From NCBI GenBank assembly GCA_964234715.1, contig OZ174287.1: 64,000 nt of DNA. One strand, written 5' to 3'. The DNA is from Podarcis melisellensis (lineage: Eukaryota). Below, piece after piece: positions 23,682-54,912 of this stretch (position 1 is the stretch's first letter; every line of letters begins with the position of its first letter). A model generated the notes under the pieces. That model ran no database searches, was not told the DNA's origin, and worked only from the letters and a program-made list of their open reading frames with translations. The position numbers and the translations under genes are program-made.

Positions 23682-25265
23682 CAGTTGGAAAAAGATTCAG
23701 AGGTTTCTGTAAAGGAAAAAGGAATCTTTGAAAAATCCAGCCCAAGCCAAAACATCCCAAAATTACACATGTTCAAAAATAAAAAGAGAAAGAAAAGAGG
23801 AATTAGAGCAAAGGAGAAAGGGTGGGGAAGGGATTATGAGAAGGCTAGAGACTAAGGGTGGAAAAGAAGGGAGAGAGAGAGAGAGAAATGGGGAAGGGAG
23901 AAAGACAATTGGACAATCTTTCAAAACTTTAAACAAAATTGAAACAATGTGAAGGAAGAAAAGTGGAAATGGGGTGGTGCATTTTCTGAGTTTACCTGTA
24001 AAGAACTGAGGACAGAGGGAGAAAAATAAATAAATCAATTAAAAAAAAAACTGAGCATGACAACTCCAGAACACAATAGAAAAGGAAGAGATTGCAAGGA
24101 TCATCTTGTGTGTTGATTCAATTCCTCTGTGGTTCCTTCTTACTGCCTTGATTTGATTCTCTTTACATCGCCACATCCACAATCAGGTGCAATTTACAAA
24201 GAAGTCTTTTGCATTCTCTCTGCACAGGAAAAAGTCACTGAAACTGGTAGGAAACACGACAAGGCAGGCTTTGCTTTGCTCTTCCCCCTCAGGGCTGGTT
24301 TTTTGATCGGCTGGAGAGGTGGCATCTCTCTTTCTCCCTCTCATGCTCTTTTGGAGCCAGGCCGTAGCTCGGAAGAGGAAAAAACTGAGACAGCGTTAGT
24401 TTTTGAGGAGCACAATGGAGAACACAAAATGCGCACACAAAACAACCTGGATTTTTCATCTTCAGAGAAAACCATCTGTTAAACTCATCATTATAAAAGT
24501 AGAAAAGCACAGATTTTTTTTTCCTCTTAGAAAACAAAGAGTTTTCCTAGCATTATTTACAACTTGTAGCTTCTGTACAAAATCATCATTCCACATATTT
24601 ACACAAGGGAACCGTTAGTTCTCATGTACCGCTGACTTCTCAAGTGTTTTCCCAGGTGGAATCTAGATGAAATTACGCCTCTGTAAAGATACTTGTGTGG
24701 TTTTAGAAAAATCTGGACAAAGGGATCCCCTGTAGCTTAGGGAGAAATCATTCTAGCTTCCTGAACACTCTTGTGAGGGTGAAGGGATGGCAACACAAGG
24801 AGACAGCAGTTAATTCCGCATCTCCCAGTGATTCACTTAGAGATCCCTGTTTCTTTCCCCAACCCTTTTATCTCACCCATTTCTGACCAATGAGTGATGG
24901 GTGGGGTCTTGCAGCTATGGTCTCTCATGCATCTTGACACGAGGGGAAGAAAAAAACAGATGATCATAAACTGATGCTCACGTATTCCCCAGCACCTCCC
25001 TACCCCACTGCTGGCAAAAAACACAATCGTTAGACTGAACTCTCTGCTCTTCTCCGTTCCTGGTGGTCTCTGACGCCATCCGATGTCCTTGGATCTTACC
25101 CCTCTTCTCTCCGTGTGCGGCGTGGACAGCGGGAGAGGCGCAGCACAGCTAGGTTCCGGCATGCCCACAGCAGCCAACTGAATCTGGTTTTATATATGTA
25201 TAAATATATATACATATGTACATAGGTTAAAAACGGGGCAGGGCGGGGAAGTGGGCCTTATACTT

Positions 25266-26779: not shown

Positions 26780-27745
26780 TTCTGGACTAATGGGCCGTTA
26801 CCACTGTCACTAATTACCACAGTGCTTTGTAAGCTTTTGGACCTGACAACCATTTTATTAAATCCCTGTAGACAGAGACCCCCCCCCCCGGCACTTTAAA
26901 GGCTTCTGGCATAAACTGAAGGAGCATGCAAAGCATATGTGAGCACAGATACCACCCATCTATGCAAGCCCCTTTTTCAGTGCAATGCACACTCGGATTT
27001 CCTTTCTTACTAGGATGTAACAAGGCTGCACCCCACTCAAAGCAGCAGAGTGTAGATAGATGGCATCCATGCTCAGATGCACATCCAAGGGAGGCCCAGA
27101 GTTTCCAGTTCCAACAATTGATAGCTATGCAAGCGGCTGCCTTCTTGTGCAGCTCTCTTTATCTGAACCAGGGCAGGCACTGTGCCATGGGACAGTCCTA
27201 TTCCTTACCCTGCCTCCATCCCTCTTCAGGTATGGGATGCAGCAGCAGCAACAAAATAAAATCTCACAGGTTTGCTCCTGTAATTAGTATTTCTTTCCCA
27301 TACACCAATTTTGTTTTTTGTCTGGGGCAATGGCTCTTTATTGCTTCTTGCGCCCAAATAAAATCTCAATGCTGTATTTCCGGAATCAAGTAAAAATAAG
27401 ATGAGCACTTCAGCTGTTAAGTTTACTTAGATTTCTTAAGTGAATCCAAACAGCCCTAGTGGGTCCTCAACCTGGTCTGTGTTTCACAGCCAAACTGCTA
27501 TTTAAAACCCAAGGGATCAATGGTGGCTTAAGCCATCTTCCTACTTACCTGTGAAAGACATGGCCCTCTAAGCTACAGTCGCAGAAACACAACCCTCTTT
27601 TACCCACCTCTAGCTACAAGGGACTTAAATCTCCCTCTTTGCTCCTCAAAGGAGTTGGGGCAGAGGGGAGAGGCAGGAGAAGGGTGCAAGTGTGAGTCAT
27701 CTCCCCAGCCCTGACCCCAGGAGTGTCTGGTCTGACTTCACATAC

Positions 27746-27953
27746 GTTTTGATCATGGCTTTGAGGGCCGTTTTCCTCTCTCGCTCAGCAAACTTGTCAA
27801 TGAGGTAGCCGGACATGCAGGGTGCCTGGCGGTACAGGCAGAAGAAGCGGTGGTAATTGGACAGGGCCCAGGCAGCCCGCAAGGCGAGCGCATGTGCCAC
27901 ACAGGGGTCTGCTTTCATCTCTTTCGTCAAATACGCCAGCTCTGTAGTGATGT
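27746..27953 (-). CDS. LENG8: LENG8 exon ([23 protein letters not shown]...[14 protein letters not shown])
   Basis: 208 nt, cag| acceptor, AC|GTATGT donor; PCI domain. Confidence 0.95.
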
Positions 27954-28640
27954 CTGGAGGGGAGAAAACGGAGTCATCAAGACTCATTCTCATGCTATAA
28001 CCTTCCTCATTTTCTTGCTCTCAAATGCCCATTATCTTTGGCTTAAATATACAGGCCTATTCTTTATGCCTACATTTAAGCTTGCTTGGCTTGGCACAGT
28101 CTATTAACACAGTTGGTCAAGAATTTAAGCTCTTCTTTCCCTATAGTCTGGAGCCTTTATCTGCTTTACAGTCTTTTGAAAGCAGGTTTAGCAATATGCT
28201 TGACATCCTTCTAGGACTGGCATTGATTGAAAGAACACTAGCCTTTGCAGGGGCAGGCTGTGGGAAAGAGAGGCGCAGGGGCTGGGAATTCTTTATGGGT
28301 CTCACACTACAGTCCAATGTGTAGTGACTGCATCTTCCGCCTACAGGCACGGTGGCTACAAGGACACATTCACGGGCAAAATGCCACAAAAAAGGGATCC
28401 CCGAGTGCCAGAGGAACTCGGCAGACTAGCCTTGAACTACCAGAGACTCCTGCACCCCTTCCCTTCAAGAAAAATTTGCTATACAGCAAATCACAGGAAT
28501 TGGTTTTCTAATTGCAATTTACATATAATATGGGCAGCCTTACCACAAAACTGCTGCAGGGTCAATTCAGATTAAGCTATGATCATACAGGTCTTCCTCT
28601 CCACCCATGCACCCCTCCCCTCCCCAGCCCCAGCACTCAC

Positions 28641-28770
28641 CCCCTGAGTTTTTTGTGAAAATGTAATAGAGGATGCGGTAAGCAGTGAATTCTCCAACAT
28701 TCCCAGGGAGGTTCTCCGCATAGAGTGACTTCAGCTGTGTCTGGCACTGGTTGAACTCCTCATGGTCACC
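28641..28770 (-). CDS. LENG8: LENG8 exon ([43 protein letters not shown])
   Basis: 130 nt, tag| acceptor, G|GTGAGT donor. Confidence 0.95.
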
Positions 28771-29936
28771 CTAGAGAAGATACTCCCATTATTATGGAAC
28801 TGTTTCAAGTTGCCACACACCCCTCCCGCTCCTAGAGCCAGATACAAACTTGGCAGTCGTGTGCTCCCTTCACCAAGCCAGAAAGGCTCTGTGCCTTCCC
28901 TGAATTAGCACCGCCCTCCTCCAGTGTAATGTGTGAATGGACCCTTAATCCTCACAGGTTCTCATCTGGCTAGTGTAAGAGAAACTCTTTGTGCCACAAG
29001 GACTACCTGCGTTGGGAACTCTGACACACCTGTGCCTCCCTCCCTCAAGTTCTGCATGCAGCAAGTTCTAGATGTAATTCAGTTTACTAATATTTTATGA
29101 AACAAACTGGAAAACAATCAGTATGTGATAGGTGAAGGAGATAGGAAAAAGGCAGAGGATAGACCAGGGGTTATAATGTTTTGGGGATCTTGGGCACACC
29201 TTCAAACTGGAGACTGCCATGGGCACCCCACCTGCGCCACATTTCTCCTCTCCCCAGCTGTAAACCCCCAACTGCCCCCTGACCCACAATTCTATGTGAA
29301 AAAGGCTTCTATTGGCTCACTAAGGCTTCTTTCAAACCTGATTTTGGGGCGAGGGAGCAGAGGATAGGACCCTGTGGGGACCAGAGAAGGTATCTGAGGA
29401 TACATGTGTAATCATGAGCACTAAGCTGGCAACACATTAACTAGGAGAACAAGGCACCTATGTCCTTCCCCAAGGCATCTTCTTGTTTTTAAATAGGTGC
29501 AAGAAACTACAGGCAGATTTATAAAGTTCTCCAAGGTTACAAAGTGACGTACACGTTTTTTTTTTCCTTACTAAAATGCAAAAGGAAAAGCAGGGATTCT
29601 CCAGTTTGAGAATACCTTGGTGCATCTGACAAAGGGCGGCAGCCACTATAGCTCTTCTCTACTGAGAAGGGCAAGCAACACATTTCCTGGGACATGGTCT
29701 GAAGAAATGCCATGAAGCAATCTTGTTGAAGCTAATTAGTTCTGGGTCGGGTGATTGCTTCAACCTAAAGGTTATGTACATGGTTCTCCCCCCTTTTCTC
29801 CTCATAGCAACCCTGTGAGGTAGGCTAAGCTACAAGATGGTGGTTGGCCCAAGATGATCCAGTGAGCTTCATGACCGAGGAAGGATCTGAACCTGGATCT
29901 CCCCCGCTCTAGCTGTGACATCCCATTGGCTCTTAC

Positions 29937-30744: not shown

Positions 30745-30944
30745 NNNNNNNNNNNNNNNNNNNNNNNNNNNNNNNNNNNNNNNNNNNNNNNNNNNNNNNN
30801 NNNNNNNNNNNNNNNNNNNNNNNNNNNNNNNNNNNNNNNNNNNNNNNNNNNNNNNNNNNNNNNNNNNNNNNNNNNNNNNNNNNNNNNNNNNNNNNNNNNN
30901 NNNNNNNNNNNNNNNNNNNNNNNNNNNNNNNNNNNNNNNNNNNN
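30745..30944. other. Assembly gap (200 N)
   Basis: Run of N; a round length suggests a placeholder. Confidence 0.99.
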
Positions 30945-45582: not shown

Positions 45583-46750
45583 TATTGGATTCGTGACCAT
45601 TATGCTCATTTGCCTTCAGTAGCAGTAAAGCTCTGCTGGATGAAATACAATTGCCTCTGATTTATTTTTTGGGAATCCTGCAATGTGGTTTTTACTCTGC
45701 TAACTATATGACGGAGTTCTGCTTTGGTACAATATTGAGTAGAATTCCATGACAGAACAGTGCATCTCAAACTATCTGATAAGGTGGACTGGCATTCCCC
45801 CCCATGTACCAGAGAGTGGTACCATATTTGGTTCCTGAAGCATCCCACCCAACCTGGGCTAAGGTGGAGTTGCCACAGACCCGCAGCTGATGGCTACTTT
45901 GAGTAGCACTAGTGTAGAAAAGGGAATATCAGCTTGCATGGGAAGGTATGCCTGGGAAAATCTTCTATTTTCTGCACAAGTATTAAACAGGAGCCCCACT
46001 CTCTTTTTCACCCCCTGGGTCACCCCCTGACTGTTTAAATGGAAACAAAATGGTTAGGGGGCCACACTCTTAAGAAGGAATGAAGCGAGGCACCCATCCC
46101 CTCTCCCCCTGCCACCACGGACTGGGCAAGGTGGGGAAATGATAGAGGGCTCAATAACAGGAATCGCCCAACATCCTCATCTCCTCAAGAAGAAGCGAAA
46201 AAGGAGCTATTATCACAGCAGGTGAGAATGAGCATTTGGGCCTTTTGCTGCTTCACTAAATTTAGCTTGGTTGAATCACTGGGAGAGAGGAGCAGCTGGC
46301 TGCAGAGGACTCATGTGTGTCTCTGCTGTCTCTCAACGTTGTTGTTTTTTTAAAGATGCCTTGCCCAAGGCTGAGGAGGGCATGCTAGTTGTTTTTACAG
46401 CAGCAAATGTAAGCCAGACCCCGACACCCAGTGAATCGGGTGCATAATTCAAAGCCTCTGTTTCTGAAGCTGTGTGCCCCAATTCTAAACTTTGAAAATG
46501 CAGGTTGCGCCAGCTGATTTTTAGTCTATTTTCCATTCCTGATTTGCAGTTCACGGCATGTTTTGAACTGGTTCCTTCAACGCCGAGCTCAGGTTGTGAG
46601 AGCCCGCAGGAAATGGAGCCAGAATGGGCCCCGGAGAAACAAGAGGGAGGTGTCAGTATCTGAACATCACTGCAGGTGAAGGTCTCCTGCAGATATAATC
46701 TTATTAGAAGGTCCATTCCACATAGACCTCTGGTGTGGTGGCACTTACTC

Positions 46751-48857: not shown

Positions 48858-48938
48858 CTAGGGCAGGAATCCGGTCCGGTAGGGAAGGTCCACTTCTTCG
48901 CTAGCACCGACGTAAGACGCTCTCATGCTGGGAGAATA
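48858..48938 (-). CDS. TTYH1: TTYH1 exon 14, coding in the long isoform (YSPSMRASYVGASEEVDLPYRTGFLP*)
   Basis: ccccatag| acceptor; similar to the recalled TTYH2 end YSPSMRATYLSVADE; TAG at 48860-48858. Confidence 0.82.
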   Translation of the reverse strand, partial: YSPSMRASYVGASEEVDLPYRTGFLP

Positions 48939-49877: not shown

Positions 49878-50865
49878 TACATGACTCTCCCCCAAAGAAT
49901 CTGGGGGAGTGTAGCTAGTTGCAGTTGCTGGGAATCGTAGCTGTGCAGACAACAGTTCTCATGATTCTTTGGCAGGCGGGGGGGGGGGGAGATGTGTTTT
50001 AAAGGTAGTGCATGAATGTGGCCAATGGGAGTCTGCAGTCCAGCAAATTCTGGGGTGCCACAGGCTTCCCATCTCTTCACTGCTTCATCGTTCTCTATCC
50101 ACCGGCAAATGCATATGGCAGACAAGCAAGACACAGGTTGGGGAAAATGAGTTGGCAGAATATGTGAACATTGCCCAAGCATTTCTGCGTCACGTGGCCC
50201 TTTCTTCAGATATTACTAACCAGTGCTGCCAGACAACTGTGGTCGCACAGGATATTAGCAGCATCCAAATTTGCCCTCCCGTCCCCTTTTTATACGTGAT
50301 GTGCTCATTGACCACAGAGTATACCTATTCCTCAACGCAGCATTCTATATTTGGAGACTTTGTTTAACCCTTCAGGTCCATTTTTTTTTTTTAAATGCAG
50401 CGTTCTTGGCAGTTGACAAGTAGTCATTCTGTGCAGCTTTAAGGGAGCAGAATTCCTGTACAATTGCATCAAACTGCTTATACAATACCAGCAAACACAA
50501 TCCCCTTTTGCTTTCCACTGTGTGTATATGGTCCTGTTATAGCAAGAGGAGTTTTTAATGTTTGATGTTTTATCATGTTTTTAATATTCAGTTGGGAGCT
50601 GCCCAGATTGGCTGGGGAAACCCAGCCAGATGGGCGGGGTATGTATGTATGCATGCATGCATGCATGTATGTATAAATAAATAAATAAATATCATCATCA
50701 ACATCATTACATTCTGGCTCACCAGATTTTCAATAGGCCCCCCTCTACTGTTTTCACAGCACAACCATGGCCACAAAACTACAGTGGTTTGTTCTGCAGC
50801 TGTGTGGCCACTGTGTATGACCCTAGTGTGCCACATCTGGGCCCCGTGCAATGTTGCAAACTTAC

Positions 50866-50944
50866 CGAAGGGGGTGGGGAATGGCGGTCGATGAGGGGGA
50901 CGCTCTCAAATCGAGGACTGCCACTGTACGAAGCGCTTTGACTC
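50866..50944 (-). CDS. TTYH1: TTYH1 exon 13, dual-frame: ESKRFVQWQSSI* (phase 0) or SQSASYSGSPRFESVPLIDRHSPPPS (phase 2)
   Basis: 79 nt, gcttgcag| acceptor, TCG|GTAAGT donor; both frames match known TTYH C-termini. Confidence 0.9.
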
Positions 50945-51672
50945 CTGCAAGCAACACCGACAAAGAAGCTGAAAACAGGTCCCCCCTCCCTCCCTTCGCA
51001 GACCACTACCCCAGAACTGGAAGGTCAAATCCACTCTCAGAGATACTCAAAAGCCTCTACTCTGACTGTCTTTCACAAGTTCCCAGAGAGCAGGCAATTT
51101 ATATGGTTCTCGGTTTATTTTGGTCACAATTCAGGAAGCCGTAAACCAGAAGGCGGATCCTCGTTTCACCAAGGCGTGATTGATACGCCTGCCTGGGCTG
51201 TGGATGCTCTTTGTGTTTTGGAGTCGATGAATTCCCTCCTTCCGTCATATAGAACCATGGAATCGTAGAGTTGTATGTGTTTGAAAGTTTAATAGGAGAA
51301 CTCCACTCGCAGGGTTTCATATGCACAGGCACAACTTGTGCAATTCTTCCTTCTCAGAAAAAGGAAGGGACAGAGCCGGCCCACCCAAGAGGCAGGGTGA
51401 AGTGCCTGCCTCGGGCGGCAGAAGGGCAAGGGGCGATGCTCTGCCTGTCCCACCACTTCTGCTGCTGCCACTGAGAGAGAGGTGCTCCTGCGTGTGCCAT
51501 AGCCACTTGCCATCCTTGTCCCTTGGCAGAGAAGCCAAACAGCAATGCTGATTCCTGCTAAGTCTGGCCTTGGCTCCTGCTGAGTTTGGCAAAAGCCAGG
51601 GTATTTTTCCATGCCACGTCGCTGCTCGGATTCCCTGCCCTCCAGGGCGGAGAAGCCAAGTGGCGATGCTTT

Positions 51673-54031: not shown

Positions 54032-54526
54032 TTATGCTCAGGTGGTATATATGTGTAAATAAAACCATATATCCTAAAGTCATGCCAAATCCAGGGCAAG
54101 CACTTGAACTCCTGGGTGCTCTTGCTGCTTGGAGACTGACGTGTGTGCAAGTGTGCGTGTACACACATATATACACAAACATCTCTCCGTGTGTTTGGCT
54201 TTAGAACACAGGAATGACATGCAGGAGTCAGGAAACGAATGAGCAATGGCAGGTAGAGAAATGAAGAAAGCACGACTGGGAATGAGGGTGATGCTGTAGC
54301 AGTAGGCGAGGAGGAGGAGGAGGAGAGGAGGAAGGAAAGGGAGAGGAAGCACTCAGATGCAGGTTGGGAGGGAGGGGTGGGGACTGCCCTCCCTTCCCCC
54401 CGCCACTCGCGCACTCGGATCTGTGCCGGTTGCTGGCCGCTCCGAGCCCCTCCCGCCTCGCAGGGGGCACCGTGACCGAGCGAGCGGGGAGGGGGGGTTG
54501 GGAGGTGGGCGCTTGGGGCTACTCAC

Positions 54527-54718
54527 ATGTACTGTGAGACGGGGGCGTTGGAAATGGGGGGGGCTGAGAGGCGCAGGCTGCCACGGCTGCCCCAGCTTGA
54601 ACAGTGGCTATAGGAGCCGGGCAGGGTGGGCCCGGCCCCCCCCGCGCGCACCGTCGGCTGCCTACGTGCCTGGGGCGTGAAAGGGTCGTCGTCCTCCATG
54701 TCGTCGTAGTCCGAGTCC
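54527..54718 (-). CDS. TTYH1: TTYH1 exon 12, long form (DSDYDDMEDDDPFTPQ-ARRQP...ISNAPVSQYM); short form would end at 54670
   Basis: gtctag| acceptor; acidic DYDD..DDDPF motif; AT|GTGAGT donor; internal CAG|GCACGT candidate donor. Confidence 0.9.
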
Positions 54719-54912
54719 CTAGACGGGAACGCGAGGAGAAAGAGAAAAAGGGAGAGTGAGGGGCAAGGTTGGCAGATGGGTGGCAAACCTCTCAAGAAGG
54801 GTGTGGCCCCACAATTGTACTCAAGAGGCAAGAGAGCGGAGTCCTCTTTTGTACCATGGCGGGCCAGGTGTCCTACTTTACAGAGAATGCTTCTCTCCTT
54901 GAAGGATTCTAT

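What the first reader, a model, noticed from the sequence alone, without database searches (positions are those of the whole stretch)
54660..54676. Candidate non-canonical GC donor (CAG|GCACGT) controlling the TTYH1 frame switch
Seen: directly after PFTPQ the sequence is CCC CAG|GCACGT (54670/54669), in phase 0. This is exactly the junction needed to reach ESKRFVQWQSSI*. The competing canonical donor AT|GTGAGT is 143 nt downstream (54527) and shifts the frame. The nearby GT (CAC|GTAGGC) is in the wrong phase. Recalled: the human protein reads PFNPQ-ESKRF at this position. Inference: a weak GC-AG site competing with a strong GT site makes a tunable switch. A single C>T change (GCA>GTA) would create a canonical donor, a plausible route to fixing the short isoform in mammals.
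Basis: partly seen in the sequence, partly recalled or inferred. Interest (0 to 1): 0.78.

Follow-up and report, generated by a model that had tools for sequence, protein, structure and literature searches.

The report
Conserved GC splice donor in TTYH1
The lizard TTYH1 gene has a real, rare "GC" splice site, unchanged from fish to reptiles but converted to the usual "GT" in a mammal, that lets the gene choose between a short and a long protein tail; it is a neat but ordinary example of a known kind of splicing switch.

Summary
On the minus strand the TTYH1 exon starting at 54718 reads ...PFTPQ and then CAG|GCACGT (last exon base 54670). A canonical CAT|GTGAGT donor lies 143 nt downstream (last exon base 54527). 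Both can join the acceptor at 50945/50944. Only the GC site gives ESKRFVQWQSSI-stop; the GT site gives the TTYH2/3-like long tail.

Comparative evidence says the GC site is a working 5' splice site:
- **Conserved DNA.** The same CAG|GCACGTAG is present in a snake, an alligator, two frogs and a teleost. A gar TTYH2 paralog encodes the same residues QARR with other codons.
- **Matching gene models.** Models with the exact PQ|ES junction exist for six squamates, alligators, sea turtles, frogs, an axolotl and a lungfish. One is a Xenopus laevis protein with cDNA-type accessions, and its locus has GC at that junction.
- **Selection on the short frame.** In the shared next exon, 8 of 9 variable columns among non-mammal tetrapods fall on third positions of the short frame.
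- **Mammalian change.** Tupaia has CAG|GTACTG at this position, an 81-nt intron and no extension.

No RNA from this lizard could be checked, and regulated "tuning" is inference. The junction is already implicit in public annotation, and one full-text search found no paper describing it. This is a new member of a known kind, of moderate interest.

The parts
54670..54718 (-). Common (short-form) part of the TTYH1 exon, encoding xDSDYDDMEDDDPFTPQ. The acceptor AG is just upstream at 54720-54719.
   Evidence: tblastn of Podarcis, Anolis and Varanus TTYH1 proteins matches here at 94-97% identity.
54664..54672 (-). GC 5' splice site CAG|GCACGT (positions -3 to +6). The cut is between 54670 and 54669, and the C at +2 is 54668.
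   Evidence: Flank score is 5.49 bits against 5.01 for the canonical site. The motif is identical in snake, alligator, two frogs and a teleost. Tupaia has GT here.
54527..54669 (-). The 143-nt alternative extension. It is exon in the long isoform (ARRQPT...SNAPVSQY+AT) and the first part of the intron in the short isoform.
   Evidence: homologous to TTYH2 residues 420-480 in PDB chains. It is identical to the tail of Podarcis isoform X3.
54521..54529 (-). Canonical GT 5' splice site CAT|GTGAGT (last exon base 54527), in phase 2.
   Evidence: Conserved as TACAT|GTGAGTA in snake, frogs and alligator.
54647..54655 (-). Weak phase-0 GT, ACG|GTGCGC (last exon base 54652). This is the rival route to the short tail.
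   Evidence: flank score 1.42. U1 duplex energy is -4.0 kcal/mol. There is no GT at the corresponding place in alligator or Ranitomeya, and no model carries the six extra residues it would add.
50945..50950 (-). Shared acceptor ttgcag| (AG at 50946-50945), used by both donors.
50866..50944 (-). The 79-nt dual-coding exon. The short frame gives ESKRFVQWQSSI plus a TGA stop (50944-50906). The long frame gives SQSASYSGSPRFES...SPPPS. It is followed by the donor TCG|gtaagt.
48858..48938 (-). Last coding exon of the long isoform (YSPSMRAS...FLP-stop). It completes the PPSY motif across the junction.

Best explanation
CAG|GCACGT at 54670|54669 is a genuine U2-type GC-AG 5' splice site. It is the upstream (distal) member of a pair of alternative donors in the third-from-last coding exon of a lacertid TTYH1 gene.

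Splicing from the GC site to the acceptor at 50945/50944 enters the next exon in phase 0 and ends the protein after 12 residues (ESKRFVQWQSSI). The stop lies 40 nt before the last exon junction, so by the usual 50-55 nt rule the mRNA should escape nonsense-mediated decay.

Splicing from the stronger GT site 143 nt downstream enters the same exon one base out of register and yields the ancestral TTYH2/3-like tail with a PPSY motif.

**Shown here**
- The geometry of the two donors and the shared acceptor.
- Deep conservation of the GC motif in TTYH1.
- Gene models for both products, including a Xenopus protein with cDNA-type accessions.
- Purifying selection on the short frame.
- GT at this site in one mammal's genome (Tupaia), and intron-retention models of several other mammals whose read-through starts with V (a GTN codon).

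**Inferred**
- That this particular lizard uses the site.
- That the C at +2 is kept because it weakens U1 pairing enough to leave the choice between tails open to regulation.
For: - **Sequence and phases.**
- **Chance expectation.** About 0.012 such sites are expected in this exon in the right phase.
- **Nucleotide conservation.** CAG|GCACGTAG is identical in lizard, Crotalus, Alligator, Ranitomeya, Xenopus and the teleost Characodon. By my own reading of that alignment, among the five non-mammal tetrapods 9 of 11 neighbouring codons with an unchanged residue vary at their third base.
- **Paralog control.** Gar TTYH2 encodes QARR as GCG CGG CGC, so the residues do not force these bases.
- **Models with the exact junction.** Erythrolamprus, Crotalus tigris, Tiliqua, Rhineura, Ahaetulla, Phrynocephalus, Alligator, sea turtles, Xenopus, Bombina, Ascaphus, axolotl and lungfish.
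- **Same-assembly DNA.** It shows GC under the alligator and Xenopus models. The Xenopus model is 450/451 identical to the protein with accessions NP_001086174 and AAH74289.
- **Selection on the short frame.** 8 of 9 variable columns in the 36-nt overlap are short-frame third positions (binomial P about 0.001). After the stop the bias moves to long-frame third positions, 11 of 19.
- **U1 pairing energy.** -5.2 kcal/mol for the GC site against -7.2 for the GT site, and -9.5 if +2 were U.
- **Background from the literature.** GC sites make up about 1 in 20 alternatively spliced introns against about 1 in 200 constitutive ones, and they have stronger flanks (PMC3167603).
Against: - No transcript from this species was seen. 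A search for short transcript-derived protein fragments found none from squamates.
- Predicted isoforms may partly rest on protein homology rather than RNA.
- +4 is C, a mismatch to U1 on top of the one at +2.
- The conserved bases also code in the long frame, and the paralog control is a single sequence.
- The codon-position statistics count alignment columns in 6-7 related species, not independent events.
- Nothing tested here shows that the isoform ratio is regulated.
Confidence: 0.85

Rival explanations
1. The short tail is made in this lizard from the weak phase-0 GT donor ACG|GTGCGC (last exon base 54652). This would give PQARRQPT-ESKRF..., and the GC dinucleotide would be irrelevant.
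For: The site exists, is in phase 0 and has a canonical GT. A GT persists at the same place in Crotalus (ACA|GTGTGC).
Against: Its flanks are poor (1.42 bits, U1 duplex -4.0 kcal/mol). There is no GT at the corresponding place in alligator or Ranitomeya. None of the proteins inspected has extra residues between PQ and ESKRF, apart from a single Q in some mammals that comes from a tandem acceptor.
Confidence: 0.03
2. The GC site is not used in this species and only the long isoform is made. On this view GCACGT is conserved because it encodes Ala-Arg of the long tail, and the intact short frame is a leftover or a by-product of long-frame constraint.
For: No RNA from this species was available. 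The TGA of the short frame is forced by the conserved long-frame Phe/Tyr-Glu codons, and gar TTYH2 has a stop at the same place in that frame.
Against: The substitution pattern in the overlap follows the short frame, not the long one, including the differences between lizard, snake, turtle and alligator. The long-frame residues there vary while the short peptide is identical in 6 of 7 tetrapods, the exception being one R-to-H change in Crotalus adamanteus. Six squamate models carry the short tail. The paralog encodes QARR with other codons.
Confidence: 0.1
3. The C at 54668 is an assembly or sequencing error, or a private variant, and the true base is T, which would make an ordinary GT donor.
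For: None beyond the rarity of GC donors.
Against: Five other non-mammalian genomes from independent assemblies have C at this position.
Confidence: 0.01

Closest known systems
Alternative GC-AG 5' splice sites of vertebrate genes (U2-type GC donors, as surveyed in PMC3167603 and PMC2490688)
   Same: GC at +1/+2 with AG at the 3' end. Flanks match the U1 consensus well (CAG before the cut; A at +3, G at +5, U at +6). U1 pairing is weaker than at the competing GT site. The site takes part in alternative rather than constitutive splicing.
   Different: The GC state here is old (teleost to reptiles). In the mammal examined it is GT, the rarer direction: 40 GC>GT against 298 GT>GC events were inferred in primates and rodents (PMC2490688). 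The two donors are 143 nt apart, not the common 4-nt offset, and the choice switches the reading frame of the next exon.
Mammalian TTYH1 short isoform (about 450 aa, C-terminus ESKRFVQWQSSI; solved chain 7p5j_A)
   Same: The exon ends at the same place, after PF(N/T)PQ. The acceptor and the 12-residue tail are the same.
   Different: Tupaia uses a canonical CAG|GTACTG donor, has an 81-nt intron and lacks the 143-nt extension with its GT donor. In mammals the other frame of the next exon is reached by skipping the acidic exon instead (models reading ...ALFPP-RNPSA...).
TTYH2 and TTYH3 C-terminal tails
   Same: The long lizard isoform is homologous: PQARR..., SNAPVS(Q/E)YM, then PR(F/Y)E...SPPPSY.
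   Different: Gar TTYH2 has GCGCGG, not GCACGT, after CAG, and its alternative frame reads an unrelated peptide. No short isoform of the paralogs was seen here.
Dual-coding alternative exons (one exon translated in two frames through upstream alternative splicing)
   Same: A 36-nt stretch is read in two frames depending on the donor used. The substitution pattern shows constraint on the frame that is not the ancestral one.
   Different: The overlap is very short, and the second frame only supplies a 12-residue C-terminus.

Membership tests
U2-type GC-AG intron (GC 5' splice site) | GC at intron positions +1/+2 and AG at the 3' end | tested here: met
   GC is at 54669-54668 and AG at 50946-50945.
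U2-type GC-AG intron (GC 5' splice site) | Remaining donor positions fit MAG|GYRAGU closely, compensating for the +2 mismatch | tested here: met
   In CAG|GCACGT, positions -3, -2, -1, +3, +5 and +6 fit and +4 does not. The flank score of 5.49 bits is reached by only 25 GC sites in 128 kb. The matrix is approximate and typed from textbook frequencies.
U2-type GC-AG intron (GC 5' splice site) | Not a U12-type donor (no RTATCCTT motif) | tested here: met
   The intron starts GCACGTAGG, which has no resemblance to the U12 donor box (own knowledge of that motif).
U2-type GC-AG intron (GC 5' splice site) | The junction is observed in transcripts | not testable with these tools
   No RNA data exist for this species. 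Indirect support: the X. laevis protein with accessions NP_001086174 and AAH74289 crosses the orthologous junction, and its locus reads CAG|GCACGT. Six squamate models have the junction. No squamate transcript fragment was found.
U2-type GC-AG intron (GC 5' splice site) | Conservation of the site at the orthologous position | tested here: met
   The site is identical in six non-mammalian genomes and is GT in Tupaia.
TTYH1 ortholog (Tweety family, Pfam PF04906) | Exons match TTYH1 proteins rather than TTYH2/3 | tested here: met
   tblastn of Podarcis, Anolis and Varanus TTYH1 gives 94-100% identity over the last exons. The tail is identical to Podarcis X3. The closest solved relatives of the extension are TTYH2 chains, at lower identity. 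Only the 3' part of the gene (from about residue 293 of 537) matched within the window.
Dual-coding exon | Both frames open and both under selection in the overlap | tested here: inconclusive
   Short frame: 8 of 9 variable columns are synonymous third positions. Long frame: it stays open and is clearly constrained after the stop (11 of 19 variable columns at its third positions). Inside the overlap its residues vary, so constraint on it there is not shown.

The most novel reading that the evidence does not exclude
The C at +2 has itself been held by selection since before the teleost-tetrapod split, because a deliberately weak distal donor keeps TTYH1 switchable. The choice is between a tail with a PPSY (WW-domain/Nedd4-type) motif and a 12-residue tail without it, so splicing would decide whether the protein can be regulated like TTYH2/3. 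On this reading, mammals hard-wired the motif-less form by C>T at +2 together with deletion of the extension and its donor.
Probability: 0.3. Interest if true: 0.55.

Novelty: new member of a known kind. Interest (0 to 1): 0.4.

Why it matters
This is a clean natural example of a non-canonical GC donor kept unchanged across lineages from teleost to reptiles as one arm of an alternative-donor pair. In Tupaia the ancestral state has been resolved (GC to GT, with the extension and its donor absent).

It also shows that the "mammalian" TTYH1 C-terminus is old and under selection in amphibians and reptiles. Non-mammalian TTYH1 can therefore toggle a TTYH2/3-like tail with a PPSY motif. TTYH2 and TTYH3 are reported to be regulated through Nedd4-2 (review PMC8273234). 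That PPxY motifs mediate this, and that mammalian TTYH1 lacks one, is my own recollection.

Practically, annotation pipelines that forbid GC-AG introns will miss the short isoform in non-mammals. It does not change any general principle of splicing.

Tried and rejected
- **Transcript evidence.** I searched for squamate transcript-derived protein fragments that cross the junction, using the C-terminal 150 residues of a squamate short isoform. Only genome-derived or mammal- and fish-like fragments came back. The mammal-like Logan fragments (P0033, P0193) and a JGI fragment (P0043) could be human or primate, so I did not fetch their contigs. No contig that I take for human was fetched or compared.
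- **Failed locus look-ups.** P0030 (bat), P0035 (hyena), P0046 (hamster) and P0072 (Xenopus cDNA protein) had no gene on record. Tupaia (P0120) and the Xenopus genome model (P0191) worked instead.
- **Turtle donor.** The donor exon was not found in the Chelonoidis locus L002. It probably lies in the N run 27462-29651, just upstream of the short-tail exon. I left the gap as it is, so there is no turtle DNA at the donor.
- **RNA structure.** The fold of 54500-54730 is no more stable than shuffles (z = -1.16), so there is no support for a structure that hides or exposes either donor.
- **Literature.** The only paper holding both "Ttyh1" and "GC-AG" mentions them in unrelated passages. Matthews et al. 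2007 and He et al. 2008 are not held.
- **Joined model.** Exons were searched singly by reference, and full-length comparisons used database proteins.
- **Scoring.** MaxEntScan is not available. Donor scores come from an approximate matrix typed from textbook frequencies and from U1 duplex energies.

Full report
**What is in the sequence**

The feature lies on the minus strand in the 3' part of a TTYH1 gene. After the acceptor AG at 54720-54719 the exon reads xDSDYDDMEDDDPFTPQ, and its last codon CAG occupies 54672-54670. The next bases are GCACGT (54669-54664).

A canonical donor CAT|GTGAGT follows 143 nt later, with its last exon base at 54527. The GC site is in phase 0, the GT four bases on (CAC|GTAGGC) is in phase 1, and the strong GT is in phase 2.

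The next exon is 50944-50866. It is preceded by ttgcag and followed by gtaagt. Entered in phase 0 it reads ESKRFVQWQSSI-stop. Entered from the GT donor it reads SQSASYSGSPRFES...SPPPS and continues into a last exon, 48938-48858, that starts with Y and so completes a PPSY motif.

tblastn of Podarcis, Anolis and Varanus TTYH1 proteins places the last exons in the window at 94-100% identity. The long tail is identical to Podarcis isoform X3, so the window comes from a lacertid or a close relative. The window has one N run (30745-30944), which is irrelevant here.

**Is it more than chance?**

I used an approximate donor matrix, scoring the flanks only. Just 25 of 7306 GC dinucleotides on both strands of the window score as well as this one. 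The expectation for this exon in the required phase is about 0.012.

Pairing with the 5' end of U1 is predicted at -5.2 kcal/mol for the GC site and -7.2 for the downstream GT site. It would be -9.5 if +2 were U. The site is therefore a good GC donor, yet weaker than its competitor.

**Homology of the two tails**

The 63-residue translation of the long form of the exon matches TTYH2 chains in the PDB from PFNPQARR through ISNAPVSEY. The solved TTYH1 chain 7p5j_A follows it only as far as PFNPQ and then reads ES.

The long form is thus the ancestral, TTYH2/3-like reading. The short form is the one known from mammalian TTYH1.

**Proteins in public collections**

I searched the exon by reference, which led to a Crotalus adamanteus fragment. 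I then used database proteins as queries and read one cluster.

The exact junction PF(T/N/S)PQ|ESKRFVQWQSSI is present in models from these groups:
- Squamates: Erythrolamprus, Crotalus tigris, Tiliqua, Rhineura, Ahaetulla (all named isoform X2) and Phrynocephalus.
- Both alligators.
- Three sea turtles.
- Xenopus laevis 1-B (accessions NP_001086174 and AAH74289, which are cDNA-type records), Bombina and Ascaphus.
- Axolotl and the lungfish Protopterus.
- Echidna and many other mammals.

Long-tail models exist in the same clades and sometimes in the same species. Dermochelys, for example, has X4 against X5/X6.

Hence the short isoform is not a mammalian invention, and both donors are in use outside mammals. 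That NCBI names extra isoforms mainly where transcript data support them is my own understanding, not something tested here.

**DNA at the orthologous site**

Genomic loci fetched through these proteins show the following.

| Species | Sequence at the junction |
|---|---|
| Lizard (window) | CAG\|GCACGTAGG |
| Crotalus adamanteus | CAG\|GCACGTAGA |
| Alligator sinensis | CAG\|GCACGTAGA |
| Ranitomeya imitator | CAG\|GCACGTAGA |
| Xenopus laevis | CAG\|GCACGTAGA |
| Characodon lateralis (teleost) | CAG\|GCACGTAGA |
| Tupaia chinensis (mammal) | CAG\|GTACTG |

- **Same-assembly checks.** In the alligator and in Xenopus the DNA comes from the assembly that carries a short-tail model. The Xenopus model is 450/451 identical to the protein with the cDNA-type accessions. 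No other near-canonical intron assignment gives PQ|ES there, so a GC-AG intron is used at this site in a frog.
- **Neighbouring codons.** Among the five non-mammal tetrapods, 9 of 11 codons upstream of the site that keep their residue vary at the third base. GCA and CGT never do. This is my own reading of the alignment.
- **Paralog control.** The gar TTYH2 paralog encodes the same QARR as GCG CGG CGC, so the residues do not dictate GCACGT.
- **Mammal.** The Tupaia intron is only 81 nt, and there is no extension or second donor. Several mammalian intron-retention models read PQ followed by V, a GTN codon.
- **Turtle.** The donor exon was not found in the turtle locus. It probably lies in an N run, which I left alone.

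**Selection on the short frame**

I aligned the 79-nt exon from eight species. The short peptide is ESKRFVQWQSSI in lizard, turtle, alligator, both frogs and Tupaia. It is ESKHFVQWQSSI in Crotalus adamanteus and DSKRFLQWQPWL in the teleost, always ending at the same TGA.

The long-frame residues over the same bases differ widely.

Among non-mammal tetrapods, 8 of 9 variable columns in the 36-nt overlap are third positions of the short frame. Those same bases are second positions of the long frame (binomial P about 0.001). Past the stop the excess moves to third positions of the long frame (11 of 19).

The counts are of columns in a handful of related species, so the P value is only indicative. 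The switch of pattern at the stop codon is nonetheless what a translated, constrained short tail predicts.

The TGA itself is forced by the long-frame Phe/Tyr-Glu codons, and gar TTYH2 has it too. The stop alone is therefore not evidence.

**Mechanism**

- **Shown:** two donors share one acceptor, they are 143 nt apart (2 mod 3), and the second exon is read in two frames.
- **Shown by comparison:** the GC donor is functional and old.
- **Inferred from position:** the short-form stop (50908-50906) lies 40 nt before the last junction (50866|48938), so by the 50-55 nt rule (own knowledge) the mRNA should not be a target of nonsense-mediated decay.
- **Inferred, not shown:** the +2 C keeps the distal site weak enough for the ratio to be set by trans-acting factors.

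The literature fits this reading. GC donors pair less well with U1, have stronger flanks, and are about ten times more frequent in alternatively spliced than in constitutive introns (PMC3167603). GC>GT conversions are the rarer direction in primates and rodents (PMC2490688).

A fold of the region gives no sign of a special RNA structure.

**Comparison with what is known, and novelty**

The kind of element is well known. The junction is already implicit in public gene models of other squamates. The one full-text search I ran for TTYH1 together with GC-AG found no paper that describes it, and a review of the family says only that the variants' relevance is unknown (PMC8273234).

What seems unreported is threefold:
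- The GC state is conserved from teleost to reptiles.
- The short tail is under selection outside mammals.
- Tupaia has GT at this position and lacks the extension.

I file this as a new member of a known kind, with moderate interest. Two earlier notes of this scan on the same window, the dual-coding exon and the long tail with PPSY, agree with what I found.

Noticed in passing
window 54636-54643 (minus strand): A run of eight G lies 27-34 nt downstream of the GC donor, inside the extension. Crotalus has seven G at the same place, but alligator and the frogs have none. G runs can act as splicing enhancers for a nearby upstream donor (own knowledge). This one is lineage-specific if it is functional at all.
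   Followed up: partly
L005 19319-19399 (Tupaia chinensis): The intron between the acidic exon and the short-tail exon is 81 nt. It is a multiple of three and free of stops, so retaining it would insert 27 residues in frame before ESKRF. A meerkat model (P0095) reads through its intron into the third frame.
   Followed up: no
proteins P0040, P0082, P0098, P0100, P0112, P0153, P0170: Some primate, horse and rhinoceros models read PQ-Q-ESKRF. The extra Q suggests a tandem (NAGNAG-type) acceptor in those mammals. The lizard acceptor ttgcag|GAG does not offer this.
   Followed up: no
L001 about 24356-24394 (Crotalus adamanteus): The short frame reads ESKHF... here (CGC to CAC), while the Crotalus tigris X2 model reads ESKRF. 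This is the only non-synonymous change in the short frame among the tetrapods compared.
   Followed up: partly
mammalian models such as P0086, P0093, P0116: In mammals the other frame of the short-tail exon (RNPSA...SEP...) is reached by skipping the acidic exon. The resulting tail has lost the PRFE and PPPSY motifs kept in reptiles and frogs.
   Followed up: no
L008 about 46290-46370 (gar TTYH2): The paralog's corresponding exon also has a TGA at the same place in the alternative frame, but the peptide there (EPVGAVRGEPSL) is unrelated to the TTYH1 short tail.
   Followed up: partly
hit list: No bird TTYH1 appears among the best 120 of 456 hits, although crocodilians, turtles and squamates do. 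This could reflect gene loss or poor assembly in birds.
   Followed up: no
window 50640-50700 (minus strand): A short tetranucleotide microsatellite (tttattta, then catg and atac repeats) lies in the intron about 170 nt downstream of the dual-coding exon.
   Followed up: no
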